Shown here piece by piece: positions 2,847-64,000 of a stretch of DNA of 64,000 nucleotides. The translations under genes were made by a program, and so were the position numbers. Position 1 is the first letter of the stretch. Every line of letters starts with the position of its first letter. The notes below the pieces were generated by a model that made no database searches, was not told the DNA's origin, and saw nothing but the letters and a program-made list of their open reading frames with translations. This DNA is from Lytechinus pictus. Its lineage: Eukaryota. The stretch is taken from positions 54,932,001 to 54,996,000 of the forward strand of contig NC_087249.1 of the NCBI RefSeq assembly GCF_037042905.1. The letters run 5' to 3'.

Positions 2847-2964
2847 ATGTTAGCTGACATGATGGAATCTACATGTACACCCAAAAGCTCCCAGTCTAGA
2901 TTCATCAGCCAAGGATGCAAGAAACACACAAGACTCAGACACAGACCACTGCAGTTTACCCATG
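2847..2964 (+). CDS. BRCA2: BRCA2 coding exon 1 ([13 protein letters not shown]...LQFTH)
   Basis: Acceptor tag at 2831-2833, in-frame TGA at 2838 upstream of ATG 2847 (alternative ATG 2859), donor GTACGT; phase 1 joins the next exon in frame. Confidence 0.6.
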
Positions 2965-8900: not shown

Positions 8901-11900
8901 ATCTAGGTCAGGGACTCGGTTTTATATGAGAGGAGCAATAAAAAGCTCTTCTAACACTTTTAAGGGGAGCACTACAAAAAGCTTTTCTTTGACATACAAG
9001 AGAACTCTTTTTTCTGATTACAAAATTGATGAAGGAACTTGCACTATTGTTACAAGCTTCAATCTCATCATGCAAGACCTTAGTGTGTTCTATAAATAAG
9101 CAATTACATGTACATGTACATGCCTTCACATGTAATATATTTGGTATACCGGTAATGCAACACAGTCATGTTTATGTATCACTGTATTGTATGTGTTTGT
9201 GAGCAATGTGAACATGCATGCTTGAAACAAGAAATTTAGGTAGCTCTGCCTAAGTTGGATCATTTAGGACCACCAAAATTTTTTTGACTTTTTAATAGGA
9301 AAAATTCAAATTTACTTTATACATGTGTAAATATGTTTTGAATAATCTGGTCCAAAGGATTGCTTCTACATATGCGATTTTTCAACTTAAAAAGGGTAGA
9401 CTTCGGCATAGTTATCTGTAATCAAAAAAAGTTTCAAATTTAAAAATCACAAATTATAAATTTATCTTCTGTAACTTGTCTTTTAATAGAGTATTATTAA
9501 TTGTTTACTTTTCTTTGAGCAGTCTACACCCCAGAGGTTGTCAAGAAGTCTTGGTGCTGAACCTGAGGAGTCGGATCTCTCTTGGACCAGTTCCTTAGCC
9601 ACACCTCCAATGAGTTCCAAGAGCAAAACAGTCACCAGCTCAAACAAGAAACACATTGAAGATGATACATGGCAAACACATGTGAGTACAAGAATATCAG
9701 AATTCATAGGCATCTATTAGGTACCGGGGATCGAAATGAGAATTCTAAGGGATGATGCCATTTTGTCTCGCCCACCAGAGGTGAAGGCGAGACTTAGGGA
9801 TCCAAATGTGGTCCGTCCGTCGTCTGTTGTCCGTCCGTCACAAACCTAATGACACATAACTCCACAACCGTAAGTTGCTTTTCAACCAAACTTGGATGGT
9901 AGATGAAATTGGGGGACCTGCATCTTATGCTGCAGTTGGAGGTCACATGGCAAGGTCAAAGGTCATTTTCAGGTCAACGTTAAAGTTTACATGCAAGACT
10001 CTTATGACACCTAACTCTGCAACAGTAAGTCACTTTTCAACCAAACTTGGATGGTAGATGGACTGGGGAGACCTGCATGTTATGCTGCAGTCGGAGGTCA
10101 CATGGTAAGGTCAAAGGTCATTTTCAGGTCAACGTTAAAGTTTACGTGCAAGACTCTTATGACACCTAACTCCGCAACCGTAAGTCGCTTTCCAACCAAA
10201 CTTGGATGATAGATGGACTTGGGGGACCTGCATGTTATACTACAGTCGGAGGTCACATGATAAGGTCAAAGGTCATTTTCAGGTCAATGTTAAAGTTCAG
10301 GGGCCGCGGAACCGGGGGGCTGGGGGGCTTCAGCCCCCCCACTTTTTTCCAAAACCGTGTACAAAAACGCAAAAATGACCATACAATTGTGATTTTTTTG
10401 CATGGTCAGCCCCCCCACTTTGAAAACCGTTCCGTGGCCCCTGAAGTTTACATACAAGACTCTCTTATGACACCTAACTCCGTAACCGTAGGTCACTTTT
10501 AACCAAACTTGGATGGTAGATGGACTTGGGGGACCTGCATGTTAGGCTGCAGTCGAAGGTTACATGGTAATGTCAAAGGTTATTTTCAGGTCAACGTTAA
10601 AGTTTACATGCAGGACTCTCTTATGACACCTAACTCCGCAACAGTAAGTCACTTTTCAACCAAACTTGGGTGGTAGATGGTCTGGGGGAACCTGCATGTT
10701 ATGCTGCAGTCGGAGGTCACATGGTAAGGTCAAAGGTCATTTTCAGGTCAACGTTAAAGTTTACATGCAAGACTCTCTAATGACACCTAACTCCGCAACC
10801 GTCAGTCACTTTTCAACAAAACTTGGATGGTAGATGTACTTAGGCGACCTGCATGTTATGTTGCAGTCGGGGGTCACATGGTAAGGTCAAAGGTCAATTT
10901 CAGGTCAACATTAAAGTTTACGTGCATTGCTCTTATGACAAGTGTTATTCCATCCCAGTCATTTCACAATGAAGTTTTTAGACACTTCTGTTGCGTGCCC
11001 TCGCACATCACAATATTTCTGGTTATTTTCATTAGTGGGCGAGGCACAAAATTGCTTTTGCCTTGTTTGAAAAGGGCAGTTAAAGGAAAGGGAAGACAGA
11101 GCTCACTTTAGGAGGCATCCAAGGTCATTAGTAAAATGTACTTTTCAATGGGACAATTGCACTAGATTACCACAGGGCACAGGCCAAAGGTAAAAAAAAA
11201 AACACTTATTTTGGCCTTAAATCTCGAAATATTTGGAAGGGCATCAAGGCCATTTCTTGGGACATTGGATTTGAATGCAGGATAGTTTGAATTTCATAGG
11301 TTTTATTGTACAAAGGCATCTTTTATATTACTCCCTATAGAGTACAAATGTGCATTTTCATGTGTGGGTATGATAATAATAATAAAATTTATATAGTGCT
11401 TTGGCCTGAGGATACAAAGTGCTGCTATTATTACCCTGGCTTTAGCTTGAGCTAACAGTATTTCAACGGCTCTCAGAGCATTCAAGGAATATTATAAATA
11501 CATGTAGCCATGTGAAACAAGGTCTTAATCAGTTTTGATTACGTTCTATTTGGCACATACAAATGTGATTTTTTATTTCTTTTCCTATGGCAGGTTGTTG
11601 CCAAGGTTCTCTTCCAAGACGGTGGTTCTGTGGTTGAGATGGATAGCTGTGAGGAAGGGGATGAGGGCTCGACACAGCCTTTGAAAGTCATCAAGTTTCC
11701 ATCTATTAATGATGACAGTCAAGAAGAAGAATTCACCATAGAAACGGAAGATGGTGGAGAAAGTGATAAGAGTTTAGCAGGTGGGAGAAAAGAGATACCA
11801 GCACCCATGGTTAACAAGGAGAGTGATGAGTCTAGAGCTCAAATGGTGACAAAAGATTCTCCTGTGTTGCCTACTACCTTGGGGCAACCTCCTGTGACAG

Positions 11901-14900
11901 ACAATGGAAAGCCACCTCTTGCCAAACATCGAGAACATGAAAGCATCAGTGAGTCTGCAGATTCAAAGAAAGTTTCTGAACTGCATGTGCAGGAAGGAGG
12001 ATCTGTCAGAGAGAAGGTTGAGGGACCCAGTGTAGGCAATGCAGCTGAATTGAATGCCAAGAAGAATGTGAGTGGAGACTCCACAGAAACAAATGCTCTC
12101 TCAGAACTTGATTGCAAACAATGGAAGAAGAGTCCTCCTGTACAACCTGCAACGTCATCCCAGCAAAGCTTTATCATTGGTAGTAATCATGCTAGCCAAA
12201 TATTGTTCAACTCACAGGAAAGTACAAAGAATGATAAGACTGCAATGGAGGAGACACTGGCTTTCCTTCTGGCTACACCTCCAAGCAGGAGAGAGAAACT
12301 TCTTGACAGATTAGGTGCATCTAGAAGTTCCATTGGTGCTGGGACTTCCCTTGAGCAAGGTGCTTGTGATGCATTAGGCTCAACATTAAATGTAAAGAAT
12401 GACTTGTCTGTTTCTAGCCAGAGTGCCCCAATGAAAAGTGTTTTAGATGATACTTTGATGAGTCCTGCAGGTTTGCTCTGTAAGCCAATGAAATCCGGAT
12501 CTGATGAAGGGCAAGAAAGGAAATCTTTAGGCTCTGAAAGCAGCATGAATGGAAAACCTGATAATGGTGTAGTGGAGACACCAAGTAGACCTGCACCAGA
12601 TGTTGATTTGCTGTCACCGATATCACCAAATTATGCAGAAGCTCTCTGTAGAGTTACTGACATTGCATCCAGTGAGCAACCTATTGCCAGTAAGAACACT
12701 CTTGCTGGTCAAAAGTGCCTTGGAGTAGAGAGAAACCTAATGGGTAACTTTGAGAATCCTTATTATGAAGAAATAATTCATATCAGGGTTACCGATCAGT
12801 TACGGTCAGAGGGTCATGATGACCCTTTGGTAAAGCAGACCTTACACCCTACTGAAGCAAATAGACCAGATGCATTAGAAGCGAAGAACTCTTCATTTTT
12901 CCCTTCAAGTCTTCCAGCAAGTGCTAATAACAAGCTTCCAAAACCTTTTCTGTCAAAGCAAGAAGCACGTAAAGCCATGTCAACATCCAAGCCCGTAGCT
13001 GTTGCCAACCTCAAGACACAGTCTGTCACCAAGGGACGGTTTAAATACACAGCTCCTGCACCAGCACCCAGAAAGGATGGAGGAAGCATATCCAAGACCC
13101 GAAGCTGGCTATCCCGAGCTGTATATGTTGAAGAGGAGGAAGATGAGAAGGAAAATGAAGAGAAGAAAGGAGATGCTGTTCAGGCAGAAACTTTGGGTGA
13201 ATCATCAAAGAAGGGATGGACGATGAAGAGACATTCCCGATCAACAACCTGTAAGTTCATTGTTTCCTCGCTCTCGCGGTCGCCTCTTTTGCAATGGCTT
13301 TTTTTACAAAAATGGTGCTGGGATGACAAAATCTCATAACTCTATATTTCTTAAAAGATTATTGTTCAGCAGTGACCAAAATACCTTTTCTGCTATTGTT
13401 ATGTTTACCAAATGGGCCGTGGTTCTTGTGAGATTGTGTTGTGGCTTTATATTTGTCTCACCTGCATAGCAGAGTGAGACTATAGGCGCCGCTTTTCCGT
13501 CGGCGGCAGTGGCGGCGTCAACATCAAATCTTAACCGAAGGTTAAGTTTTTGAAATGACAGCATAACTTAGAAAGTATATGGACCTAGTTCATGAAACTT
13601 GGACATAAGTTTAATCAAGTATTACTGAACATCCTGCCTGAGTTGCAGGTCACATGACCAAGGTCAAAGGTCATTTATGGTCAATAAACTTAGACCATGT
13701 TGGGGGAATCAACATCAAAATCTTAACCTAAGGTTAAGTTTTTGAAATTTCTTCATAACTTCGAAAGTATATGGACCTAGTTGATGAAACTTGGTCATAA
13801 GGGTAAACAAGTATGACTGAACATCCTGCCTGAGTTTCAGGTCACATGACCAAGGTCAAAGGTCATTTAAGGTCAATGAACTTGGCCATGTAGGGGGTAT
13901 TTGTTGAATTACCATCATAACTTTCAAAGTTTATAGATATAGTTTATAAAATATGGATATAGCGGTAATCAAGTATCACTGACAAGTCTTAGGTCACATG
14001 ATCAAGGTCAAATGTCATTTATTGTCGATGAACATAGTATTGTATCATTATATGAATTGTGTTTTTTGTGAATAATTATGTTATAGTAGTTTTCAAAGTC
14101 AGCACTGCTGCTATATTGAATCGCGTGATGCAGGTGAGACTGCCAGAGGCACTCCACTTGTTGAGATGTAGAGGCTGGATTCAGGCAGGTTCATACTTGG
14201 AAGAATTGTCTATTCATTATAAAAAAAAGTGATTCAATCTAATTTGATAATGTGAGATCGAGTTATTCCAATGCTTATATTGCTGTAGTTTATATATAGA
14301 ATTTACTCCATTTTGGGAAAGTCATGTCAACATTTCTAATAAATTAAATGTCGTTTTTTATAGCTCATCTGTAATAATATTAATAATAATAATAATAGGC
14401 ATTTATATAGCGCCATCTATCTAGAAATATTCTATTCCGAGGCGCGTTTTTGTCTCGCCTGCATAGCAGAGCGAGACTATAGGCGCCGCTTTTCCGACGG
14501 CAGCCGCGGCGTCAACATCAAATCTTAACCTAAGGTTAAGTTTTTGAAATGACATCATAACTTAGAAAGTATATGGACCTAGTTCATGAAACTTGGACAT
14601 AAGGTTGATCAAGTATTACTGAACATCCTGCCTGAGTTTCAAGTCACATGACCAAGGTCAAAGGTCATTTAGGGTCAATGAACTTAGACCATGTTGGGAA
14701 AATTATTTTCAAAATCTTAACCGAAGGTTAAGTTTTTGAAATGACATCATAACTTAGAAAGTATATGGACCTAGTTCATGAAACTTGGGCATAAGGTTAA
14801 TCAAGTATTAGTAAACATCCTGCTCGAGTTTCAGGTCACGTGACCAAGGTCAAAGGTCATTTAGGGTCAATGAACTTTGGTCAAGTTGGGGGTATTTGTT

Positions 14901-17900
14901 GAATTACTATCATAACTTTGAAAATTTATGGATCTAGTCCATGGAACTTGGACATAAGGTTAATCAAGTATTAGTGAACATCCTGCCTGAGTTTCAGGTC
15001 ACATGACCAAGGTCAAAGGTCATTTAGGGTCAATGAACTTTGGCCAAGTTGGGGGTATTTGTTGAATTACCATCATAACTTTGAAAATGTATGGATTTAG
15101 TTCATGAAACTTGGACATTAGGTTAATCAAGTACCACTGAATATCCTGTGCGAGTTTCAGGTCACATGACCATGGTCAATGGTCATTTAAGGTCAATGAA
15201 CTTTGGCCGTGTTGGGGGTATATGTTAAATTACCATCCTAGCTCTGAAAGTTTATGGATCTAGTTCATAAAACTTGGACATGAGAGTAATCAAGTATCAC
15301 TGAACATCCTGTACGAGTTTCAGGTCACATGACCATGGTCAAAGGTCATTAAAGGTCAATGAACTTTGGCCGTGTTGGGGGTATTTGTTGAATTACCATC
15401 CTAACTGTGAAAGTTTATGGATCTAGTTCATAAAACTTGGGATATAAGAGTAATCAAGCATCACTGAACATCCCCTGTGAGTTTCAGGTCACAAAACCAA
15501 GTCAAAGGTCAGTTAAGGTCAATAAACTTAGGCCATGTTGGGGTAATTGTTGAAGTGCCATCATAACTTTGAAAGTTTATGGATAGAGTGAATGAAATGT
15601 GGACATGGGTGTAGTTGACAGTCTTAAGTCTCCGTTCAAATGTCATTTATGGTCAATGAACGTGGTATTATGTCATTATATGAATGATTATTTTATAGTA
15701 GTTTTCAAAGTTAGCACTGCTGCTATATTAAATTGCGTAATGCAGGCGAGACTGCCAGAGGCGTTCCACTTGTTTATTATTATTATTACCCCGGCTCTAG
15801 CTCGAGCTGCCTTTCAGCGCTCATGCATTCAAGGAATTACTCCTGCCGGGTACCCATTCACCTCACCTGGGTCGAGTGCAGCACAATGTGGATAAATTTC
15901 TTGCTGAAGGAAATTACGCCATGGCTGTAAAATGATTGTTCAATTTAACCCTTTAGCACCTGAACCGCCCGAGACCGCCCTTCCTATTACACACTGAACC
16001 GCCCTTAACCGCCCGTACGTTTTCTTTGCGCTATAGTATCTCTTGTCTATGATTTACCGTGGTAATATTGCGTGTGCATACCGTATAGGTTGGCTGCTAT
16101 AGAGATCTGCATAGAAAAGTGTATGCTCCTATTGAGTATAATAGAGAAAAACCGATTGACATGCATCGGTGTGTAGCAAGTTCCAGACTGTTGCGCAGTC
16201 GATCTCAGCAAAGATGGCTGCGTCCATGTCTCGGAAAACCACTTACTTCGCCGAAGAAGCTCGGGCGTTGCTATATGTTCATGAAAACGTTGGATATCAC
16301 ACAGAGTGACATCTAGATGTGAGTTCGAATTAATTTTTGACATATTTGATCCAAGATTTGGCGAAAACTTTAGTATTCTGTCAGTGATACTTTACATTTT
16401 TTTGAAGGCGTGGGACTGGGGCGGCTGAAACCCAAACTTTTGTTTTTTTTCTTCTCGCTCTGCAAATGATTGTCAAAGGTCAATATTCGTACATCTGATT
16501 GAACTTTGCCATGTACCATTCTATTCAACAGGTCCTATGCTACAAAATAAATATAACTTGTAATGAACAAAAGTAAATTTATAAAAAACTATTTCAATTT
16601 GTTTGGAACAATGCCTACTTATTACCAGTTTTATTGTTTCCTCCAGTGAGTAATTGCCATTATGCATAGGAATCTGTAGGTGCTATAGGGTTAATACATG
16701 TATCTATTGATGTTGTTCTTTCTTGATTATTTCAATTGATCCATGTACATTCTATGAAGATGAAACAAAATTTACTTTGATTACATTCCATAGTTTAAAT
16801 TCCTGTGTGTCTACAAGAAACAGACCTAAAGTTTGTGCTTTCACTTTTTACAATAGGTTGAAAGAAAAAAAAAACCTTAATCTCTTTTTTATCTTTTCAA
16901 ATGTTAATTATGACAAAAAGGTAGGAAAAGAAAATTAAGTCACAAGAAAAGCAAGTTCTGTGTTATTACATTTTGCATATTTAATTATATAAAATGCATG
17001 TGTGAATGTATGAATTAATGATATGCAAAATAAGTTTTATGAGAAATCTCATTCACCTCTTCAATTTGTGATAAGTTACATGTAGATACAGTCCAATGAA
17101 TGAATAATTGAATTGACATTTGATTTGTTTCTTTTCCCCAGCATTCACTACATTTTCTACATTTTGCAAGACGGCCCCAAACCCCCTTACTAGAGCAATA
17201 CCCACGGCTGAAAGCCAGACTGGTCTTGCATCAAGCACCACTCCTACATCTAGTAGGTCAGTCATCCTAAGTGCACCACCACATAATAAGACTTTGGTAA
17301 GGATCAGAGAGTTCCCACACAGCTGGCCCTCACCAAAGCGATTAAGACTAGACGAAGAGAGAGATGAATGTAACATGAAAAATGACACGAAGAGCAATCC
17401 TTTGCCTGTTGAGGAATGTGATGTAAAAATTCCAAAGTTAGCTCCTGTAGGAAGTGATGAAATGCCACCTCGTGCACAAGATCGGGTGTCTCTGGTCATT
17501 AACAATGCTGGGAATGGTCAAGAATGTGTAGATCTCCATGACAAATTTAATTCAACAGATCATGTATTGTTTACAGAAGTTCATGGTATGACTCAAAATG
17601 TTGGATTCTCGAGTGCTAGTGGGAGAGCCATATTTGTTTCCCCTGAATCCTTGAAGAAAGCTGAAAAACTCATTGGAGATGTAGACAAGGAAAAGCCACC
17701 GGAAGAATATCAACTGAATTTGTCATCAGCAGATTCTCAATGTGGGTTTCAGAGTGCCAGTGGGAAATCTATTCAAGTATCAGATGAGGCACTGAAAAAA
17801 GCTAAGAAAATCATTGATGAAGTGGGTTTGAATGATGAAACAATACACGATTCACCTGGTAAATCGTCACTGTCGGTAGGGTTTACTTCTGCACGTGGTA

Positions 17901-20900
17901 ATGCGATCAATATATCGGCAACTGCCATGGCGAAGGCAAGAAAGATAATGAATGACATTAACCATGATGAGGAATTGAAGACCATTGGGCAGGAAGGAAG
18001 AGTAGTAGAAATTTCTGGTCTTCACCATGTGGATGGAGGGGGAGATAGGAATATGATTCAGACTAAAGAAGGAGTGCAGAGTGGGGGCTTATCTGGAAAT
18101 GCTCAACTGAAAAGTACAGTGGAAAACAGGCAGCGTCACAAAGGATTCCGTCCCTTCAAACCACCATCTCTTGTTGCAAACATACAGCAACCATCTCATT
18201 TGACTTCAAGCATTCCATCCTTGAATCAGACTAGTGCAAATGAATTAATCAAAGAATCGGATAGAGGAAACGGTCTCAAGACGTGTGAAGACAGTATTCC
18301 TGTTGGATTGCAGGAGGGAAATGCAACAATGCCAGAGCTTGAGATCATCACCCTGCAACAAGAACAGAAGATAGAAACTACTAAAAGCAGTAACATGCCA
18401 AGAGAAAAACAGAAACTGGACAGTGGGAATTTACAACCTATTGAGAATAGTGACATTTCTGATGATGACTGTCTGTCTGCCACACAGGCTGCAAGAGAGA
18501 TCAAAGCTGCAGAGGAGATGGAACTTGTTTATAATTTCATGCAAGAAGAAGACACAGCATTCTCTCAGCTTGATGTGTCGTCAATCATAGCAGTTGGTCC
18601 TTCAGAGAAAGGAGCTGCACAGATTCTCAAATGTCCAGAATATCATACAGATCAAAATAGGGAGAGTCAAGTATCAAATTCTCGAGATCATCAGATGTTC
18701 AATCACACCATAGAGCCTACTCCATCGCAAGGCTTTCTTACTGAACAAAGTGGCAATTTCAGTCTCTTGGAAAGCAAGCTTCAAAGAGCCAAACCCATGG
18801 GGGCTGTCAAGCAAACCACTGATAGGAATGAAGTATTATCTACAACCATTAAGCACAATGATGTTCAATTTGAAACGATGGTTCAAAAAAGGATTGATGA
18901 ATCTAAACAATACATACCTTCTCCAAATCATGCAGAGAGAGTAACTTCAGACCTGAAGCAGAATGGAGATTACAGTAAAGTTGAGACCAATACTATTAAA
19001 GAATCACCTGATGTAGACCTGTCTGTGAAGATGATTGGACAGTTTATGGATGATAATTCCATCCTGACAAAGGAGACAGAGGGACTTTGTACCCTTAGTG
19101 TGAAGGACAAAGAGCAACAGGAGGTTAGTCACACTGATAGTCATGAACCATATCAAGGCACATGTAGTACTGATGTTACCGAAATCTCAAGCAATGCCCA
19201 GCAATCTAGTTATGTCCAAGATGTGGAATGTATTGAATCTTTATCTAATGATAAGGATAAAGCACATATTCCAGGTGATCACCTTCAACCGGACATACTA
19301 AATGCAACATCATACCAAGAGAATGACTCCATACCAGACCAGAAAAAGAGAGACAAACGTTGGTTGGAGATGGATGTCACATTAGAGGCTTGTGGCCCTG
19401 TTGGTTTCAAGATAGCTGGGGGACAAAAAATTGAGGTTTCAGAGGCAGCACTGAAGAAGGCTACTTTACTGCTCTCAGATCACAACTCAGATGGAGAAAG
19501 AAATAAGCAGCTCAATCCTGATATTTCCAATAAGTCTTTCAACCAGCTTATTCCAACTGTGTTAGCACATGATATGAGCATATCTCGTGCCACTCATCAC
19601 CAGGGAAATATGGAGCTATCTGAACATGTCAAAGTCCCAGAGTGCAGACCTCTGATTAATGTCTTACAGGGGGAAGAACTGCTGATTGATGATAACAATG
19701 GTGGCTCAACCATTAGAGAGAGTAGCATGTCTGAAGAAGAATCTGCTTCATCTTCTGTATCTGAAGTACGTCAGGCTGGTTTACAGACTGCAAGAGGCAA
19801 GGATAGCAAGGTATCAAAGTCAGCTCTGCAAATGGCAAAAACGGTTATTGGTGATAATCATGAAAATAATCCTGTGGACTATTCCATTGACTCCAAAGCT
19901 TCTAAAGACATTCCTGGCAGCGACCAAGATTTTGTCAACTTTGGTTTCCAGACAGCAGGAGGGAACAAAGTTTATGTTTCAAGTTCTGCACTTCAAAAGG
20001 CAAGGAAGGTTATTGATTCAGCTCTAGAAATCATACCTGAATGTTCTCCTGGAAGGTCCTCAACGATACATCAGAACACCATGGATTCCAAGACTACATC
20101 ATGTACTATGAACAAACATAACATCGTCCATTCAGAGCAGGCTCCACAGAAACATTCATCTCAAACTGGATTATCTCCCAAAGTTGCTGCTTTGGAGCCA
20201 GTTCTTTCAGAATACAATGATGTGTCTGATGTGTCTGGAAATTTGTCAAATACTGAAAGTGGTCTTCTGGTGGCTTTCCATACTGCAAGTGGAAACAAAA
20301 TCAGTATATCAGATGATGCCCTCCAAAAGGCAAGGAGACTGGTTTGCAATGAAATGACGAGCTTTCATGAAGGAGCTATTGAGAAATCTACTAAGGATTC
20401 CCATTCTAAACAAGTTGCGCTGATAGACACATTTGAAAATATCAGTGGAGACTGGGATGAAATTTCTGAAGCATTGCTAATTGGAGAGAGGCAACCAATT
20501 GCTAATGATACAGATTTGTGTAATAAAGGAAATACTGCTAACCAACACGGGGCAAGCGTTGCTAGAGATGTGAACTCCAATATACCATTCTCCAAATCTA
20601 GGCTTCAAAGGAAAAAGTATGGTGACTCGTATGGTAATTCGTTAGGCCAAAAGGGTTCAGAATTCATTACAAAGTCATCCCCAAGAAATGTAGGTTTCCA
20701 GACTGCAAGAGGAGGTGCAATATCTGTTTCAGATGAATCTTTGAAGAAGGCAAAACAGCTGTTAGGAGAGGATTCCGGACATGAAAATATCCAGGAAATA
20801 TCAGGCCTCAAAGAGACTATGTTTGAATCATCCGAATTAATGACTGGCTTTCAAACTGGTAGTGGAAAGCACATCCAAGTTTCAGAATCCGCAATCCAAG

Positions 20901-23900
20901 TAGGTAAGCAGCTATTATCAAATGATCTTGATATCTCCAATGGTGGTGCAACATCCTCTCTACACCAAAAACACCCGGATTCTGCTGAGTTGGAGGTTGG
21001 GTTTCAAACAGGAGGCAGGAGAAGGATTCAGGTTTCAGAATCATCCATATTGAAAGCAAGGCAGCTATTGTGTGATGAATCAAACCAAGATGTGATGGAA
21101 TTCAGTGGTCTGATAATGAAAGAAACGTCAGGACAATTTCAACTTGATTCTGCAAGATCCCCAGATATTCTTATAGGTGAAGAAAAGCAGAACAACACTT
21201 CAAAAGAATCATCAGTGCCCACTAACAGTAAAACTAGAGACCAACAAGTGCAGAGAGTTTCTCGCTCTCTTGAGAGCCAAAAATCTCATATTAAAAGTGT
21301 GCCAGTGGGCTTTCAAACGGGACATGGGAGAAAGGTACAGATTTCTGTGGCATCTCTTCAAAGAGCAAAGGAATTCTTAGCTGCTGGCTCTGATTCAATA
21401 CCAGATCAAAATATAGCTGTTGGCTTTCAAACGGGACATGGTAAGAAGGTCCAGGTTTCTGAAGCGTCTCTCCAAAGAGCAAAGAAATTCTTAGCAGATG
21501 AGTCCAGTGAAGTACCACATCAAAATATAGCTGTTGGCTTTCAAACGGGACATGGTAAGAAGGTCCAGGTTTCTGAAGTGTCTCACCAAAGAGCAAAGAA
21601 ATTCTTAGCTGATGAGTCCAGTGAAGTACCACATCAAAATATAGCTGTTGGTTTTCAAACGGGGCATGGTAAGAAGGTCCTGGTTTCTGAGGCATCTTTC
21701 CAAAGAGCAAAGAAATTCTTAGCGGATGAGTCCAGTGAAGTACCAGATCAAAACATAGCTGTTAGCTTTCAAACGGGACATGGAAAGAGGGCTCAGGTTT
21801 CTGAAGCATCTCTCCAAAGAGCAAAGAAATTCTTAGTGGATGAGTCCAATGAAGTCCCAGATCAAAACATAGACATTGGCTTTCAAACAGGACATGGCAA
21901 GAAGGTTCAGATCTCTGAGGTGTCTCTAAAAAAAGCAAAGAAATTCTTTGCAGATGAGGCCAGTAAAGAAACGGATCAAGACATAGCCATCGGCTTTCAA
22001 ACAGGACATGGTAAGAAGGTCAGGCTATCCAAGGCATCTCTTCAAAGAGTAAAGGAATTCTTAGCTGCTGGCTCTGATGCAGAACCAGATCGAAACATAG
22101 CTGTTGGCTTTCAAACAGGACATGGTAAGAAGGTCCAGGTTTCAGAGGCATCTCTCCAAAGAGCAAAGAAATTCTTAGCGGATGAGTCCAATGAAGTCCC
22201 AGATCAAAACATAGCTGTTGGCTTTCAAACGGGACATGGTAAGAAGGTCCAGGTTTCTGAAGCGTCTCTCCAAAGAGCAAAGAAATTCTTAGCGGATGAT
22301 TCCAATGAAGTACAAGATCAAAACATAGCCATTGGCTTTCAAACAGGACATGGAAAGAAGGTCCAGATTTCTGAGGCGTCTCTACAAAATGCAAAGAAAT
22401 TCTTCGCAGATGAGGCTAGTAAACAAACAGATCAAGACATATCCATCGGCTTTCAAACAGGACATGGTAAGACGGTCAAGCTATCTGAGGCATCTCTTCA
22501 AAGAGCAAAGGAACTCTTATCTGCTGGCTCTGATGCAGAACCAGATCAAAACATGGCTGTCGGCTTTCAAACAGGACATGGGAAGAAGGTCAAGGTTTCT
22601 GAGGCGTCTCTTCAAAGAGCAAAGACATTCTTAGCTGCTGGCTCTGATGTAGAACCAGTAAACTTGGCTGTCTGCTTTCAAACAGGACATGGGACGAAGG
22701 TTCAGGTTTCTGAGAAATCTCTTGAAAAAGCAAAGGAATTCTTAGCTGATGAGTCTATTGCATTATCAGATCAGAACACAACTGGTGGCTTACAAAAACG
22801 ATTTGAGAATAATGACCAGGTTTCTGAGGCAACCCTTCAAAGAACAAAACAGTTAATAGCTATGGAATCTGATGTAGGAACTGAAGTACATGTACATTCA
22901 AATGATTCTGCTGTTTGTGGTGACGTATGTGAAGAGTCACTCTCTGAGAAATCCTCCATGATGACAGGATTTATGACAGGGGATGGAAGAAAAGTTCAAG
23001 TCTCAGAGGCTTTGCTTCAACAAGCAAAGAATAATTTTGACTCCGAGGTATTTACAGATTTCAGCAGAGAAATTGGTAAAAGGGAATTACATGTACCTCC
23101 TGGGAGTCGGCACCAAAATCTTTCCTCCAGTGCTGATGGAAATTCACCGACCCACCAAAGGAAAGATTTAACAGAAGATCGGACATTGGAAAGAGAGCCT
23201 CTGAAAGGGGGTTGCAGTCTTACCAACTTACCACCACAGAAACATCTTCCTGGAGGGCTCACCAAGAGAGGCTTGGTAGACATGAGAAACAGACAGTGTA
23301 ACCAGCAGAGTAACAGGAGAGGTAGCCTCCCAACTGGACAAAAACCATACAAACGTAAGTAATGTCACTTGCATGATTTTTTCTTCATTTATTTATTCAG
23401 ATTAATGTTAAGGACATGTGCAGCCATCAAATTATTTACTAGCTTGTGCTTCTTCAAATGAATCATTAGTATGACTTGAAAATGAAGAATAAATATTAAC
23501 TTATTTCAATGTTATTTGTGGCTTTTCCCATTGGATATTGCTTCAAAAATAAGCATGTCTTACAGAGATAAAATAAAGATAAAATGGTTTTCAGAATACC
23601 ACTTTGCAGAGATTCTAAGGGTATTTTATCTCACTGATTTTAACAGACAAATTGTTTTATTTTATCTGAGATAAAATGGATCTCAAATACCATCCATATT
23701 TTTTTTTCTCCCTGGAGATACATGGAGCTCAAGTGTTAATTAGTATAATTAGCTTGAAACTGGTTATTATTTCCTCCATTTTCCAATCAATTCGCTTTAT
23801 GACCTGAAGCTGTGCCCTTCTCACTATGATAGTAATATTTGCTTGAAGCAATTTGAGATATTAGTATATTGTTTTTAATATTGAAAATGAGATTTTGTCT

Positions 23901-26900
23901 GAAGTCAGAAGGACATTAATTGTATATATTTACAATTTGCATGTGAGAAAAAGGTTTTCAATTTGGTGAAACCCCTGAAAATATGAACCCTGAGAAGATT
24001 TAAAAAAAAAAAACACATTAATTAAAGGTCAAGTCCACCCCAGAAAATTGTTGATTTGAATCGATAGAGAAAAATCAAACAAACATAACACTGCACATTT
24101 CATCGAAATCGGATGTAAAATAAGAAAGTTATGACATTTTAAAGTTTTGCTTATTTTTCACAAAACAGTTCAATGCGCAACTCAGCGATATGCAAATGAG
24201 AGAGTCGATTTCTTTTGTTTTTTATTGTTTGAATAATACAATATCTCAAATTTTACAGATTTGACAATAAGGACCAACTTAACTTAACCATGAACTGTTA
24301 AAATAATGGTAATTGCACATGTTCAGGGAGAAAATAAACTTTGTTACACTTGACAAGGAGGAGAAAATTAGAATATTTCATATAATAAAATACAAAAGAA
24401 ATAGTGAGTGGGTGACGTCATCAGTCTGCCAATTTGCACACCGACCAGGATGTGCATATAACTGTTTTGTGAAATTAAGCAAAACTTTAAAATGTCATAA
24501 CTTTTTTATTTTACACCCGATTTTTGATGAAATTTTCAGCGTTTTGCTTGTTGGATTTTTCTCCTTTTTTTTAAATCAAGTTTTTGTGGACTTGTCCTTT
24601 AATATGATATTTCTTCCAGTCAGAAACTTTTCACCCAGGATTCATATGACCCTCCACTATCCATTATAAAACAACAGATTAATCACTATTTGAGTGATAT
24701 TGATGAGATATTGTGGCCCGAATTCACAAAGGTGGTTTTTAAAACCATCGGTTGAACCCATGGTATATGCAGATTTCCTGTATAAATTTCGCTTATTTAC
24801 TGCATATATTAAAAAATGATGGGCGCTTTTGTCACAGTGCGCCAAGTTGACGCCTGTTGGCATGGTTATCCACGCTATTTTATTCAGTCGTCCACTGTTT
24901 TGAATTAATGAATCCACTGTTCAAACAGTTGACTCATGAATAAAATAGCATACTAAATCATAGCAACAGGCGTCAATTTGGCGCACTGTGACAAAAATGC
25001 CCATCAGCATTGGACATTTTTTTATATATGTGGTAAATAAGCATAATTTATACAGGAATTATAAACCATGGGTTCAACCAATGATTTTAAAAACCACCTC
25101 CATGAATTCGGGCCAATGAGTGTTAGAGAGTTTGGGTGAAAAATCAACTGGTGATAATTTTGGTGATTTTTATTACTCAATCTACCATCTCATGATCTGT
25201 CAAAATTTATTGGTCAGATACAATCTATGCATATAAGAATTTTCAGCCTTTAATTGTCCGTTTTTCATAAAATGGCCAAAAAACATGATTTTCCTTGATT
25301 TCAGCTCCAAGAAGAGTCAATGAAAAGGTATCGTCATCATCCAGAGGTTTGGTTCCTAGAGGTTCAAATCCAACGGGTTAGTTCTTTGAAAACATTACTA
25401 GATTATCAAATTTAATGTTTTCTCAATGAAAGTTTAACAAAGATACAAGTTAACTTGCATGAGTTGAATATTTTCCTAAGGCAACTTGTCAAAAGTCTGT
25501 ACTGTGTGTTTTCACTGGAATCCGGCTAGGGTACTATGTATCTTTTCATAGTGGTGTACCTGCATTCCCTGTTATTGTTTTCTCTGATGATATGTGAAGA
25601 TTGGTAATGAAAAAGCTGCTTGCAAGATTCCTGCGGAAAAGACACTTCTGACTTTTGACAAGGTGACTTTAAGTCAAAGCAATGTTTTAGACCAGGGGAG
25701 CGTTTCATGAAAGGACTTGTCGGACGCTTTATCCAACAAGTCCTTTTTTATCCGACAGATACCATAGTAACAGTGCCTCTCAGCCAATCAAAATCAAGAA
25801 AAGTTGTCAGATCTGACAAATTGTTGGACAAAAATGTTGATGAAATGCTCCCCAGGGGCCAGTAACACAAAGCTTAGCAATCATTGGAGAATATTTTTTT
25901 TATTGATTGCATTAACTACAATGTACAATGATTGATTGCATTTGGTACAATGTACAATTAATCTTGAAGAATTGAGCCTATGATTAATTGCTACTCTTCC
26001 AAGTCGTGCTGATTTCTGTGATCTTGATAGATTTGACTTGTGCAAAAATAACTGTATATCAAAAGATAAATGGCTAATAATTTGTTGTAGTTTTTAATTT
26101 AATTTTTTTTTTCAATTCAATTTATTAAGGTAAAAAAATGACATGAGTAGATATATACGTTGTAAAATGTTAGGATCAAACATCCTAGGAAAGCCAGTGG
26201 CTTGAAAAGTACAGTAAGGGGATCCATGACAAATAAATTAGTTTTTGTTCTTATGTATTTTGTTCTATAGATTCCCCCAAATCATCAATTTTATTGGTAT
26301 ATGCTGACTCAAACCATATTTTTTGAGGAGCAAGTATATGTGTCTCAAAATATGTTTGATGCACATGATGCACATTTTCTGGGAGGGGGTAGTTTATATA
26401 TATTGCATAGTAAATGACACACATGGAGCATTTTGAGACAATTTATTGTCGGAAAAAGAAAACATCATTTGACAGATTTTAAGCTCAAGCCATAAGTTAT
26501 ATTTTTGGTAAAAATTCCACATGATAAAATTGCCCAAGTTTTTATTTAAGAGAATAAGTACACTGCCTGTGGGCATACTCACATTCTTATTTGTTACATA
26601 AATGGGACAAGTGGGCATGTAGATTAGCAAGGAGCTTTAGAAATCACACTGGCCATTAGGTTGAAAAGGATGTCGTCATAGACTTCATTCGCAGTCGCAC
26701 TGTACATCCCTTTATCACTGTCCACTTATTTTCATGATTTTTTTGGTGTCTTTTTAGTTATTCTTAGTGATAGAACAAAGCCATTAAAAGCTCTCCAATC
26801 ATCACCACCTAGCAGTAGGTAAGATTCATTTCTTATTTTGACTTGTTCATTTAATTTTGATTTGTTCATATACGTATATCAGTTATGTAGTTATACTTAG

Positions 26901-29900
26901 ATGTGTGCATTTATACATTCATTTCTGTTGTTGTAAATTTGCTTTCATATTTATGTCTAAATTGTCTATGTATGGGCATGTTTTTTTGTGGGGGGAGGGG
27001 GTAACATTTTCTGTTAAATTTGATACAAAGATTATTACATAACTTGTCTGATATTATAATAGAACTTGTAATAAAGAAACAGCTTGACAATTTCAGATGA
27101 CTGTTCCAAATTTTACTTCCATGCATGATGGATTTCATGGTATAGTTATGAATGAAATGTCAAATTGCTGGGCCTGTTTTACAAGGGGTTGCAATTGATT
27201 CAATTTGAAATCAAATCATTCTGTACTCGTTTCACTTGAGAACATAATAATAGAGATCAGTCTCATTGGGAGTTGATTTGAATCACTTGCAAGAGAATGA
27301 CCTCATTTCCTATCTTTTCTAACACAGTTGAGATCAATATTAATTTCAATGAATCAATCTTAACTCTTGTTGATACAGTGCGGTGGGTATTAACTGTTCT
27401 TATACTTAAATCTTTCAACATTGAAGTACCATGTCTGTTTAATTCTTTTCTAGTAGGCATTCTATCAGTAATGAGAGGCTACATGTACATGAAACAGGAC
27501 CCTTCTTGAAGCCAAGCCTCAATATAGATACCACCAACCAATCACAGAGCCAGCTAGAAGCCACACCTATTCCAGAGGAAGGGGCATGTTCATTTGTCGC
27601 TAGGTGGGATGAGGCTCGAAGAGCTCAGCAACAACGGATCAATGCAAAAAGGGTATGAGAACTTTACTTTTCTTGCTCTAGTACATGTATTAATAGTAAT
27701 ACGTATTTATACTGCACTCTGTTAGAAATGAGTATCACTCAAGGTGCTTATGCAGATTATTATCTCTCTGCTCAGCTATTTCAATCTGTTTTTCTGCACA
27801 CAGTGTATACGCACTCTCCGTTCCTAGGGGAGTATTCCAGCCAGTTGTTAGTGATTTCAATCTAATTTTTCTGCACACAGTGTATACGCACTCTCCGTTC
27901 CTAGGGGAGTATACCAGCCAGTTGTTAGTGATTTCAATCTAATTTTTCTGCACACAGTGTATACGCACTCTCCGTTCATAGGGGAGTATTCCAGCCAGTT
28001 ATGTGATTTAAATCTAATTTTTCTGCACACAGTGTATACGCACTCTCTGTTCCTAGGGGAGTATTCCAGCCAGTGGTTAGTGATTTCAATCTAATTTTTC
28101 TGCACACAGTGTATACGCACTCTCCGTTCCTAGGGGAGTATTCCAGCCAGTTATGTGATTTAAATCTAATTTTTCTACACACACACACACTCTCCATTCC
28201 TAGGGGAGTATTCCAGCCAGTTATGTGAGGTGCTCACAATGCTTGTCAAACTAGAATGACTTCACATCCCTCTGGATACCCATGTACATTGTACATACCC
28301 GGGTGGAGAGTGGCAAATGGAGATATATTCCCAAAGTTCTGCGTTGGGATTCAAATTCTTGATTTTTAGTTCTGGAGACCCAAAGCACCTCATCTCAGTG
28401 AAACTATATGATTTCTGATGATTTTCAGAATTCTACGCGTCTCAAAATTAGTCCTTTTGTACAGAGCAGAGAGAGAGAGAGAGAGACAGAAAGAAAGGAT
28501 CTTTCATTTTTATGAGTGGTATTTATTGGCATCATGAATTATTTGAAAAATAAGATTTAATAGATTTCTGATGTCAGTGTTTAGTAGAATATTTAGGCTT
28601 CCTTGGAAGGTGTATAATGTGAAGACATTTTTATCTTTACCTAGATAAAATGTTCAGTATTGACCAGATTGTCACCAGAAAAAATGAAAACTTGCATCAT
28701 ATTTAAGAGGATTTTAAAGGGAAAAGTTACACTAAATAGCGTTTTCCCCCTAGATATAGGATCTTTGAAACTTGTGAATGATAATTTTGGAATGTTTTTC
28801 AAAATGTTAAAGAAAATTAGGATTGTAGACTTGAAAGTGCATGTAGGGTAAATAGAAATAAAGAATAGGATTTTTCGAAATTAAGGTTCAGTTCTGAAAT
28901 GACCTCATACATGTATGGCTGAATTCTGTAATCCATATTCCACTCTCTGCAATGTTTTAGTAATAGACTATGGAAAATTATTTGGGCAGCATTACATGAG
29001 GGTATTTATACAACACATGGATAGATCCTTGACAGCTGATTGGATGAAAGCGTGTCACATGACATTCAGAGGAATCAGCTATAGCACGCTGAAGTAAATG
29101 AGCCAGCACTGCAAGATCCCTGGGCACACTGAACCCATGGACATGCCCCGTACACGTTAAGTGAATTAGCAGTATACGCGCATATACGTAATCACGTTTT
29201 CGTATCTCTGACCGATGTACATAGCACTGCGCATACACGTTGCTAAGCTGAACACAATGCGCGTACGTACGTTGCTAAGCTAATTATTCCCAGGGTGCGG
29301 CTGCTTACCGTTTGGATTTTCTTCTGGATTTTATGGAATTCGTTCACAAATTGGACTTCATGGATCTATGACTTTATGGATCTATGTTGAAAGTACTTGA
29401 CTCTCCTGGGATTACTGGAGTAAATCTACTTTACGCTCAAAAGACAACATTGTAAGCAAAATAAGACATAACGCACGTTAGTCATAGACTAGACCTATAG
29501 ATCTAGCCTATCGAGATCTAGTCTAAACTGTACGCTATCGGTGTTGTATAAAACAACTATTCAATGTTGTATTCGTGCGACGTTCCGAATATTGCATTCG
29601 TTGCAAGTTGAAAAGGTCTATTCAACTCCTCTTCGCGTCGTTGAATAGACTGTTTCAACTTGCACACTCATGCAATATTCGGAACGATCGCACTCATCAA
29701 CATTGAATATTTGTATACAATCTCATTGGTTCTTAAGATGAGCATATTTTTCATTTACAAAATTATGACTTTGATTTGTCTTCCATTTTTGAACAAATTT
29801 TGTTCGAATGAGTATTACAGGTTATTTAGAATTAATAATCGAACATTGGTGTATAATAACTAGTTCTTTTTGTCCCATCTATTAATATACATGTACAAAG

Positions 29901-63658: not shown

Positions 63659-64000
63659 GTGAGTTGGGATATCATGATTCATATCATTTCTGAATTCTGA
63701 CCTGCTGATTAAAACTGTCTTTCTTTGTTTTTAAAACTGATGAAAAGAGTGAAATTTTAGCTCTAAAATGATATATATATATATATATATATTTATGAAT
63801 ATAACTAGGTAGATTATAGACCATATTGAACCCTGAATTTTGACAGGTGGTAGAGTGTTTCATAAAATGATGCTATGGAGCCTAATTTAATAATTGGCTG
63901 GAAATAATTCATGTGATCAATCTTTCTTTTTTTTTTAGCTAACAGGCAAATTTTCCAATGGCTTGTACTAATGATTAATTTTAGATTAATTTTATTGACC

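What the first reader, a model, noticed from the sequence alone, without database searches (positions are those of the whole stretch)
17600..23050. About 25 BRC-like repeats, roughly three times the vertebrate number
Seen: 10 dispersed repeats (17600-21075), 13 tandem units, one degenerate unit (~22784) and one terminal repeat (~22964). Established: vertebrate BRCA2 has 8 BRC repeats, and a tandem expansion is known in Trypanosoma brucei. Inference: this is a lineage-specific increase in RAD51/DMC1 loading or sequestering capacity in an animal BRCA2.
Basis: partly seen in the sequence, partly recalled or inferred. Interest (0 to 1): 0.8.

Follow-up and report, generated by a model that had tools for sequence, protein, structure and literature searches.

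The report
Sea urchin BRCA2 with 25 BRC repeats
The giant exon of the sea urchin Lytechinus pictus BRCA2 gene really does encode about 25 RAD51-binding BRC repeats, but similarly high counts occur in other sea urchins and many other invertebrates, so it is a good example of a known kind of repeat expansion, not an exception.

Summary
Observation confirmed. Scored alone with Pfam PF00634, 23 pass, unit 5 is marginal and unit 24 is degenerate. Thirteen units form a 38-aa (114-bp) tandem array. The gene is a true BRCA2: helical, OB and tower exons lie downstream at 50045-63679.

Interpretation partly supported. The count is about three times the mammalian eight, but it is not peculiar to this animal. 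With one profile, S. purpuratus has 27 units (14 in the same array), L. variegatus 17 (6 in the array), Diadema 16-17, a crinoid 17, amphioxus 24, Ptychodera 14, teleosts up to 16, a leafhopper 26-27 and the annelid Owenia 39-40. I found no paper reporting the urchin count.

Additional results:
- The array predates the Lytechinus/Strongylocentrotus split but was amplified or homogenised separately in each lineage, and differs two-fold between congeners.
- The unit core is under purifying selection (pN/pS 0.34, against 0.89 in the linker).
- Units 9-23 and 25 carry FxxG instead of canonical FxxA, a variant concentrated in echinoids, a crinoid and a few other lineages.

RAD51 binding is inferred, not shown. 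Two other first-reader notes in this scan cover the same stretch.

The parts
17142..23354 (+). Giant BRC-encoding exon of L. pictus BRCA2 (6,213 nt; equivalent of human exon 11)
   Evidence: Polypyrimidine tract plus AG at 17140-17141 and GTAAGT donor at 23355. Matches P0001 aa 844-2913 exactly. Open frame 17120-23362.
17597..17701 (+). BRC unit 1 (FSSA)
   Evidence: PF00634 29.3 bits on its own. Orthologous unit in L. variegatus and S. purpuratus.
17738..17842 (+). BRC unit 2 (FQSA)
   Evidence: 47.4 bits with the broad profile.
17873..17977 (+). BRC unit 3 (FTSA)
   Evidence: PF00634 24.4 bits.
18140..18166 (+). KGFRPFKPP, an FxPP-type motif between BRC3 and BRC4 (candidate second kind of recombinase-binding site)
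   Evidence: Translation. KGFRPFKPP is conserved at the same relative place in five echinoid proteins and Ptychodera; amphioxus keeps only the PFKPPS core. The FxPP class is defined in PMC11229353.
19397..19501 (+). BRC unit 4 (FKIA)
   Evidence: PF00634 23.1 bits.
19772..19876 (+). BRC unit 5 (LQTA), marginal; the key Phe is replaced by Leu
   Evidence: PF00634 17.3 bits, below the 20.3 cut-off. The S. purpuratus ortholog keeps FQTA.
19937..20041 (+). BRC unit 6 (FQTA)
20267..20371 (+). BRC unit 7 (FHTA)
   Evidence: PF00634 37.1 bits.
20687..20791 (+). BRC unit 8 (FQTA), the last FxxA unit
20840..20944 (+). BRC unit 9 (FQTG), the first FxxG unit; 51-aa spacing
   Evidence: One-to-one ortholog in L. 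variegatus and S. purpuratus (tree).
20993..21097 (+). BRC unit 10 (FQTG)
   Evidence: PF00634 37.3 bits. One-to-one orthologs.
21302..22771 (+). Tandem array of 13 BRC units (units 11-23, all FQTGHG). Period 114 nt = 38 aa; unit 22 is one codon shorter. Unit starts: 21302, 21416, 21530, 21644, 21758, 21872, 21986, 22100, 22214, 22328, 22442, 22556, 22667. Subtypes: A = units 11, 17, 21, 22; B = 12-15, 18, 19; C = 16, 20; unit 23 divergent.
   Evidence: Tandem Repeats Finder, 13.5 copies. Units listed. Nucleotide identity 69-97% and pN/pS 0.34 in the core against 0.89 in the tail. Subtype clades.
22781..22885 (+). Degenerate unit 24 (LQKR...[13 protein letters not shown]); only the C-terminal half resembles a BRC repeat
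   Evidence: No Pfam hit; 19.3 bits with the broad profile. L. variegatus has a single unit that joins a unit-23-like head to this tail.
22961..23065 (+). Terminal BRC unit 25 (FMTG)
   Evidence: PF00634 24.6 bits. Orthologous FMTG unit in L. variegatus and S. purpuratus.
2847..13282 (+). Upstream BRCA2 coding exons (approximate tblastn bounds): 2847-2963, 3529-3684, 5265-5441, 7995-8258, 9523-9696, 11588-13282
   Evidence: tblastn of P0001 and L. variegatus P0217.
25307..37051 (+). Exons between the BRC exon and the DNA-binding domain: 25307-25375, 27449-27652, 36932-37051. The last begins the helical domain. The RefSeq model P0001 runs on to 37072 and ends there.
50045..63679 (+). Exons of the BRCA2 DNA-binding domain (helical, OB1, tower, OB2, start of OB3): 50045-50233, 52586-52723, 53522-53722, 54216-54416, 55054-55233, 56393-56542, 59757-59900, 61158-61307, 62048-62233, 62948-63181, 63566-63679. 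The gene continues past the window end.
   Evidence: tblastn with Ptychodera BRCA2 P0003 and L. variegatus P0217. Domain positions in those proteins come from Pfam.

Best explanation
This is the large central exon of the Lytechinus pictus BRCA2 gene. It encodes 23 clear BRC repeats plus one marginal and one degenerate unit.

Each BRC repeat is a roughly 35-residue peptide. In characterised BRCA2 proteins it binds one RAD51 monomer in two ways: its FxxA motif is inserted into the pocket RAD51 uses to oligomerise, and a second hydrophobic/acidic module (LFDE in human BRC4) contacts another site.

Units 1-8 are FxxA type. Units 9-23 and 25 are FxxG type. Thirteen of the FxxG units form a compact 38-aa tandem array.

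The array arose before the Lytechinus/Strongylocentrotus split. Since then it has gained, lost and homogenised units, most likely by unequal crossing-over or gene conversion, which produced the A-BBBB-C / A-BB-C higher-order pattern. The RAD51-contacting core stayed under purifying selection.

The most likely function is the ordinary one: multivalent capture and delivery of RAD51 (possibly also DMC1) to single-stranded DNA, with high capacity per BRCA2 molecule. The individual FxxG units probably bind somewhat more weakly than FxxA units.

Shown: identity, count, architecture, evolutionary pattern and sequence constraint. Inferred: RAD51 binding, its stoichiometry, and any benefit of the high number.
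For: - Identity: 100% match to the L. pictus protein P0001. Collinear with the full-length L. variegatus BRCA2, and DNA-binding-domain exons lie downstream.
- Repeats: PF00634 E = 3.8e-223 with 24 stretches; 23 of 25 units pass individually.
- Structural correspondence: a tandem unit aligns to human BRC4 in the RAD51 co-crystal 1N0W chain B, with FQTG matching FHTA and FLADE matching LF-DE.
- Constraint: pN/pS is 0.34 in codons 1-26 and 0.89 in the linker; the frame is intact across 6.2 kb.
- Shared ancestry with turnover: S. purpuratus has 14 units of the same 38-aa period and L. variegatus has 6. Flanking units are one-to-one orthologs, while the tandem units of the two Lytechinus species form a clade apart from the S. 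purpuratus units (93/85 support).
- FxxG is compatible with binding: the FHTG tetrapeptide still occupies the RAD51 pocket with about six-fold lower affinity, and some archaeal RadA proteins use Gly at this position (PMC4855620). Five proteins or fragments in the survey have only FxxG units.
- Repeat number matters elsewhere: in T. brucei, BRC number affects recombination efficiency and RAD51 localisation (PMC2408642).
Against: - No binding data exist for any echinoderm BRC repeat.
- The Ala-to-Gly change weakens the core contact in the human system, so the FxxG units might bind poorly or differently.
- A single BRC repeat supports viability in mouse ES cells (PMC12803100), so a large number need not be functionally required.
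- The two-fold difference between congeners (13 against 6 tandem units) suggests that number is loosely constrained, or that one assembly is wrong.
- pN/pS was computed over non-independent pairs of paralogous units and can be distorted by gene conversion.
- Transcript inclusion of the whole exon rests on the RefSeq model, not on cDNA that I examined.
Confidence: 0.8

Rival explanations
1. The tandem array is largely neutral repeat drift. Slippage or unequal crossing-over adds and removes redundant BRC units with little effect on recombination, so the count of 25 reflects mutational dynamics and not selection for more RAD51 capacity.
For: - Tandem unit numbers differ widely: 13 in L. pictus, 6 in L. 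variegatus and 14 in S. purpuratus.
- BRC counts range from 6 to about 40 across animals with no obvious biological pattern.
- One BRC repeat suffices for viability in mouse ES cells (PMC12803100).
- Serial gains and losses of BRC repeats are documented in Drosophila yakuba (PMC2882388 abstract).
- The linker tail evolves almost neutrally (pN/pS 0.89).
Against: - The unit cores are constrained (pN/pS 0.34), so individual units are kept binding-competent and are not left to decay.
- Only one of 14 array positions is degenerate.
- In T. brucei, reducing BRC number impairs recombination.
- The mouse work reports that multiple repeats give resilience under stress (title and abstract).
Confidence: 0.25
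2. The FxxG units are a functionally distinct class and not simply more of the same. They could be low-affinity or filament-binding repeats (like human BRC5-8), or units tuned to DMC1, so that the protein has an N-terminal FxxA module and a C-terminal FxxG module with different jobs.
For: - There is a sharp positional switch from FxxA (units 1-8) to FxxG (units 9-23 and 25), conserved in L. variegatus, S. purpuratus and both Diadema species.
- Gly at position 4 lowers tetrapeptide affinity about six-fold.
- The residue at position 4 is what separates the two known recombinase-binding motif classes, FxxA and FxPP (PMC11229353).
- FxxG makes up only about 10% of BRC units overall and is concentrated in a few lineages.
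Against: - Apart from the Gly, the units match the BRC consensus along their whole length and align to BRC4.
- The crinoid Antedon has 15 of 17 units as FxxG, and five proteins or fragments have only FxxG units. In those proteins FxxG must carry the general RAD51-binding role.
- There are no data on DMC1.
Confidence: 0.2
3. The number of tandem units is an assembly artefact: expansion or collapse of a repetitive 1.5-kb stretch.
For: The sister species assembly has only 6 units. Tandem repeats are a classic source of assembly error. In T. brucei the genome sequence predicted 15 repeats where mapping found 11 per allele (PMC2408642).
Against: - The units differ by 3-31% in nucleotide sequence, so they can be placed uniquely.
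- The reading frame is intact.
- The independent S. purpuratus assembly has 14 units of the same period.
- The window contains no N.
Confidence: 0.05

Closest known systems
Strongylocentrotus purpuratus BRCA2 (LOC584780, P0218; the species' sequence is also cited as UniProt A5A3F7)
   Same: Same gene and same layout: three N-terminal FxSA units, a spacer of about 450-470 aa containing KGFRPFKPP, dispersed FQTA units, two FQTG units at roughly 51-55-aa spacing, a 38-aa FQTGHG tandem array and a terminal FMTG unit. It has 27 units with my profile and 25 by Pfam.
   Different: It has 14 tandem units of its own subtypes (tails such as ADDTDALP and ANDTEPLP), which group apart from the Lytechinus units. 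It also has two extra dispersed FxxA units.
Lytechinus variegatus BRCA2 (LOC121415003, P0217)
   Same: 91% identical in the N-terminus. The dispersed units 1-10 and the terminal unit are one-to-one orthologs, and it shares the A and B tandem subtypes.
   Different: It has only 6 tandem units against 13 plus one degenerate unit. It has no C subtype. Its last array unit looks like a fusion of the head of L. pictus unit 23 with the tail of unit 24.
Human BRCA2 exon 11 with BRC1-8 (BRC4-RAD51 structure, PDB 1N0W)
   Same: A single giant exon encodes all the BRC repeats. The units align to BRC4 across the FxxA and LFDE modules. Downstream domain order is the same: helical, OB folds, tower.
   Different: Human has 8 dispersed repeats with no tandem array. 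Most human repeats are FxxA, whereas 16 of the 25 urchin units are FxxG.
Trypanosoma brucei BRCA2 BRC expansion (Hartley and McCulloch 2008, PMC2408642)
   Same: A recent tandem amplification of BRC units with copy number variable among close relatives. It has a variant C-terminal unit set apart from the array.
   Different: The T. brucei units are near-identical and number 5-15. The urchin units are 69-97% identical in nucleotide sequence, show higher-order structure and sit alongside 10 older dispersed units. The trypanosome expansion is absent from sister species, whereas the urchin array is shared by at least two urchin families.
Drosophila yakuba dmbrca2 BRC array (PMC2882388)
   Same: Serial gains and losses of BRC repeats by slippage or unequal exchange in an animal BRCA2.
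   Different: The numbers are much smaller, and Drosophila BRCA2 lacks the canonical DNA-binding domain (stated in PMC12412785).

Membership tests
BRCA2 orthologs | BRC repeats (PF00634) in the central region | tested here: met
   E = 3.8e-223, 24 stretches.
BRCA2 orthologs | BRCA2 helical domain followed by OB1, tower/OB2 and OB3 | tested here: met
   tblastn with Ptychodera and L. variegatus BRCA2 finds collinear exons at 36932-63679 covering helical, OB1, tower, OB2 and the start of OB3. P0001 aa 3010-3064 match the PF09169 start at 22.1 bits. The rest of OB3 lies beyond the window.
BRCA2 orthologs | Orthology with full-length BRCA2 of related species | tested here: met
   The non-repeat N-terminus is 91% identical to L. 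variegatus, 64% to S. purpuratus and 44-48% to Diadema. All of these carry the full Pfam domain set.
BRCA2 orthologs | C-terminal TR2 RAD51-filament-binding region | tested here: inconclusive
   It lies outside the window. In L. variegatus and S. purpuratus, PF22687 scores 22.6 and 23.2 bits, below the 27-bit cut-off.
BRCA2 orthologs | N-terminal PALB2-binding motif and DSS1 binding | not tested
   No tool result. The N-terminal exons are present but were not analysed for the motif.
BRC repeat (RAD51-binding A-motif repeat) | Each unit scores with the curated repeat model | tested here: met
   23 of 25 units at E <= 0.001 individually. Unit 5 scores 17.3 bits and unit 24 gets no hit.
BRC repeat (RAD51-binding A-motif repeat) | FxxA core motif | tested here: not met
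   Seven units are FxxA and unit 5 is LxxA. Sixteen units are FxxG and unit 24 has neither. So most units depart from the canonical fourth residue. FHTG still binds the RAD51 pocket about six-fold more weakly (PMC4855620).
BRC repeat (RAD51-binding A-motif repeat) | Second module (LFDE-like hydrophobic pair plus acidic residue) about 21 residues after the Phe | tested here: met
   The alignment to 1N0W chain B places FLADE opposite LF-DE. The tandem units carry F/L-L/F-x-x-[DEG] at this place.
BRC repeat (RAD51-binding A-motif repeat) | Direct binding of RAD51 | not testable with these tools
   This needs biochemistry or a complex prediction with the L. pictus RAD51 sequence.

The most novel reading that the evidence does not exclude
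Echinoid BRCA2 carries a distinct, fast-evolving module of FxxG-type BRC repeats. These would bind RAD51 with deliberately lower per-site affinity but high valency. Their copy number (6 to 14 in three species) would be tuned by selection, for example to meet the recombination demands of very fecund, highly heterozygous broadcast spawners. On this reading, FxxG is a third functional class of recombinase-binding motif beside FxxA and FxPP.
Probability: 0.15. Interest if true: 0.55.

Novelty: new member of a known kind. Interest (0 to 1): 0.3.

Why it matters
BRC repeat number is usually presented with mammals (eight) as the reference and Trypanosoma brucei (up to 15) as the extreme. This survey shows that BRCA2 in many animals carries 15-40 BRC units, that sea urchins carry 17-27, and that the urchin array changes two-fold between congeners while its RAD51-contacting core stays constrained.

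That makes urchins a natural series for asking what BRC number does. They are an experimentally tractable system with large numbers of synchronous embryos and gametes. They also offer a set of FxxG repeats for testing how the fourth residue of the motif sets affinity.

None of this changes the accepted model of BRCA2. It extends it.

Tried and rejected
1. I suspected the gene might be a BRC-only paralog, because the matching RefSeq protein P0001 carries only PF00634. I rejected this. The DNA-binding-domain exons are downstream in the window and collinear with L. variegatus BRCA2. P0001 is a truncated model.

2. The first homolog search used the 2,080-aa exon as query. It missed all other urchins because of the tool's length window (at most 3,640 aa), which briefly made L. 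pictus look unique. Re-querying with P0001 fixed this.

3. I tried to name the organisms behind P0002 (22-23 units, assembly GCA_029980085.1) and P0005 (19-21 units, ENA ERZ25767047). The cluster look-up, contig look-up and a paper search gave no names.

4. Four literature searches for a reported urchin or invertebrate BRC count found nothing explicit, and a search for teleost counts was not followed up. The S. purpuratus sequence is used only as an alignment row.

5. I did not run a structure prediction. A lone BRC peptide is disordered without RAD51, and the tool does not take complexes.

6. My own profile counts run higher than Pfam's at E <= 0.01: L. pictus 25 against 20, Owenia 39-40 against 26, amphioxus 24 against 19. 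Both are given, and the ranking is the same by either measure.


Full report
**What is there.** The window comes from the sea urchin Lytechinus pictus. The 2,080-codon open frame at 17120-23362 is 100% identical to part of RefSeq protein LOC135154073 isoform X1 (P0001, 3,071 aa). The coding exon runs from 17142 to 23354 (6,213 nt). It is bounded by a polypyrimidine tract plus AG and by a GTAAGT donor. P0001 maps to nine exons between 2847 and 37072.

P0001 carries only the BRC repeat family in Pfam and stops just inside the BRCA2 helical domain, so I checked whether this is a real BRCA2. It is. tblastn with Ptychodera flava BRCA2 and with the full-length L. variegatus ortholog finds collinear exons for the helical domain, OB1, tower, OB2 and the start of OB3 at 50045-63679. 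The L. variegatus model splices from 37051 to 50045, where the L. pictus model runs on to 37072 and ends. The L. pictus gene model is truncated, and the gene itself runs off the end of the window.

**The observation.** Pfam PF00634 hits the exon with E = 3.8e-223 and 24 stretches. I placed 25 units (alignment A1):
- units 1-10 are dispersed (17597-21097);
- units 11-23 are head to tail with a 114-nt period (21302-22771);
- unit 24 is degenerate (22781-22885);
- unit 25 is terminal (22961-23065).

Tandem Repeats Finder reports the same array independently (114 bp, 13.5 copies). Scored one by one, 23 of 25 units reach E <= 0.001. Unit 5 scores 17.3 bits, under the 20.3 cut-off, and has Leu in place of the key Phe. 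Unit 24 is not recognised by Pfam, though a broader profile gives it 19.3 bits.

**How unusual the count is.** I built a broad BRC-unit profile (A2) from 143 units: the 25 L. pictus units plus 118 from eight other proteins. I ran it against all 1.84 billion representative proteins. L. pictus ranks third by total score, but it is not alone:

| Species or protein | Group | Stretches |
|---|---|---|
| Owenia fusiformis | annelid | 40 |
| Macrosteles quadrilineatus | leafhopper | 27 |
| Branchiostoma belcheri | amphioxus | 24 |
| Diploptera punctata | cockroach | 22 |
| Ischnura elegans | damselfly | 20 |
| Argopecten irradians | scallop | 21 |

About two dozen further entries in the list have 20 or more stretches.

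In the 220 proteins I held, 81 have 15 or more units, 21 have 20 or more and 5 have 25 or more. Teleost BRCA2 proteins reach 16, so eight is a mammalian figure and not a general vertebrate one.

Pfam's own model at E <= 0.01 gives lower absolute numbers but the same order: Owenia 26, S. purpuratus 25, L. pictus 20, amphioxus 19, the unnamed P0002 18, L. variegatus 14 and Ptychodera 14.

**Echinoderm comparison.** My first search missed other urchins because of its length window. A second search with the non-repeat N-terminus of P0001 found them: L. variegatus (91% identity), S. purpuratus (64%) and two Diadema species (44-48%), all with the complete DNA-binding domain. Unit counts with one profile:

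| Species | Units | FxxG units |
|---|---|---|
| S. purpuratus | 27 | 17 |
| L. pictus | 25 | 16 |
| L. variegatus | 17 | 9 |
| D. antillarum | 17 | 10 (counting one SQTG unit) |
| D. setosum | 16 | 10 |
| Antedon (crinoid) | 17 | 15 |
| Acanthaster (sea star) | 11 | 0 |
| Ptychodera | 14 | 2 |
| Amphioxus | 24 | 2 |

The three camarodont urchins (the two Lytechinus species and S. purpuratus) share one layout:
- three N-terminal FxSA units;
- a spacer of about 450-470 aa;
- dispersed FQTA units;
- two FQTG units at roughly 51-55-aa spacing;
- a 38-aa FQTGHG tandem array;
- a terminal FMTG unit.

The array has 14 units in S. purpuratus, 13 plus one degenerate unit in L. pictus, and 6 in L. variegatus. 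Diadema instead has about ten FQTG units at roughly 55-aa spacing.

**How the array evolves.** Within L. pictus the 13 units are 69-97% identical in nucleotide sequence. They fall into subtypes arranged A-BBBB-C, A-BB-C, A, A, then one divergent unit. This agrees with another first-reader note on the same stretch.

A maximum-likelihood tree of 39 units gives three results (only 38 columns, so many forks are unresolved):
- The two pre-array FQTG units are one-to-one orthologs in all three species (starred branches).
- Eighteen of the 19 Lytechinus tandem units form one clade apart from the S. purpuratus units (93/85 support). The exception is the last L. variegatus unit, which pairs with the last S. 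purpuratus unit.
- The A and B subtypes are shared by both Lytechinus species, while C is nested in B and found only in L. pictus.

So the array predates the split of the two urchin families. Each lineage has since amplified or homogenised it, and L. pictus and L. variegatus have diverged two-fold in unit number. This is what unequal crossing-over and gene conversion produce. The last L. variegatus unit reads like a fusion of the head of L. pictus unit 23 with the tail of unit 24, which fits that process.

**Evidence that the units are functional.** Pooled over unit pairs, pN/pS is 0.34 in codons 1-26 (the part that contacts RAD51 in known structures) and 0.89 in the nine-codon tail, with equal pS of 0.32. 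The pairs are not independent, and gene conversion can distort these values. The contrast between core and linker within the same units is still the expected signature of constraint.

A tandem unit aligns to human BRC4 in the RAD51 co-crystal 1N0W, with FQTG opposite FHTA and FLADE opposite LF-DE. Both binding modules named in the literature, FxxA and LFDE (PMC9162458 abstract), therefore have counterparts.

**The FxxG point.** Units 9-23 and 25 carry Gly where the canonical motif has Ala. In the human system, the FHTG tetrapeptide binds a humanised RadA with a Kd of 1,590 uM, against 280 uM for FHTA. It sits in the same pocket (PDB 5fov), and some archaeal RadA proteins use Gly at this position naturally (PMC4855620).

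Across 2,984 units in 219 proteins, 88% are FxxA and 9.6% are FxxG. FxxG is concentrated in about 19 proteins, five of which have only FxxG units. Some of these are partial gene calls. The crinoid has 15 of 17 units as FxxG.

I therefore read FxxG as a functional, probably somewhat weaker, variant of the A-motif. I do not read it as a sign of decay. Whether it marks a separate functional class is open. The recent classification of recombinase-binding motifs by their fourth residue (FxxA against FxPP; PMC11229353) does not discuss Gly.

**Mechanism.** The most likely mechanism is the standard one. Each intact unit captures one RAD51 monomer by mimicking the RAD51 oligomerisation motif, and BRCA2 delivers the bound RAD51 to single-stranded DNA through its DNA-binding domain. 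More units would mean more RAD51 per BRCA2 molecule.

This is inferred from family membership and sequence constraint. No echinoderm data exist. In T. brucei, lowering BRC number impairs recombination and RAD51 localisation (PMC2408642). In mouse cells one repeat supports viability and several give resilience under stress (PMC12803100). With 3-residue linkers between 35-residue units, it is uncertain whether all 13 tandem units can be occupied at once.

**Comparison with the literature and novelty.** In 2008 the T. brucei count was described as greater than any described elsewhere in nature, with Trichomonas at 14. I found no paper giving the BRC count of a sea urchin or surveying the high counts in invertebrate animals. 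The S. purpuratus sequence has been used as an alignment row for variant classification.

The phenomenon itself is known: lineage-specific BRC amplification and copy-number turnover are documented in T. brucei and in Drosophila yakuba (PMC2882388). The sequences are public and carry precomputed Pfam annotation. I therefore class this as a new member of a known kind.

**Verdict.** Interest is modest. The useful contributions are the corrected baseline, the shared but fast-changing urchin array, and the FxxG-dominated unit class.

Noticed in passing
window 18140-18166 (+): [10 protein letters not shown] motif (FxPP type) sits between BRC3 and BRC4. KGFRPFKPP is conserved at the same relative place in L. 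variegatus, S. purpuratus, both Diadema species and Ptychodera; amphioxus keeps only the PFKPPS core. In vertebrates, FxPP 'P-motifs' bind DMC1/RAD51 at a site separate from the BRC site, but there they lie after the BRC region (exon 14 and TR2).
   Followed up: partly
window 36932-37072 and 50045-63679 (+): The RefSeq model for L. pictus (P0001, isoform X1) ends at 37072, just inside the helical domain. The L. variegatus ortholog splices from 37051 to 50045 and continues through exons that are all present in this window. The L. pictus annotation is truncated, or describes a short isoform.
   Followed up: partly
window 15000-15584: A 163-bp satellite of at least 3.6 copies at 88% identity lies in the intron upstream of the BRC exon. 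The scan region began at 15000, so the array may extend further upstream.
   Followed up: no
window 19772-19876 (+): BRC unit 5 has Leu in place of the key Phe in both Lytechinus species but Phe in S. purpuratus. It looks like a unit that is losing its RAD51-binding core.
   Followed up: partly
P0077 (Owenia fusiformis), P0078 (Macrosteles quadrilineatus), P0018 (Mytilus coruscus), P0005 (unnamed, ENA): Independent BRC tandem arrays with different periods occur in other animals: about 30 aa in Mytilus and 49 aa in P0005. Counts reach 39-40 in the annelid Owenia, higher than any figure I found in the literature.
   Followed up: partly
P0084, P0134, P0169, P0209, P0204 (unnamed proteins or fragments): Every detected BRC unit in these proteins or fragments is FxxG (9-15 units each).
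   Followed up: no
window 55630-56430: Another first-reader note reports tandem copies of a splice acceptor plus exon start just ahead of the tower-domain exon (56393-56542). I did not examine it.
   Followed up: no
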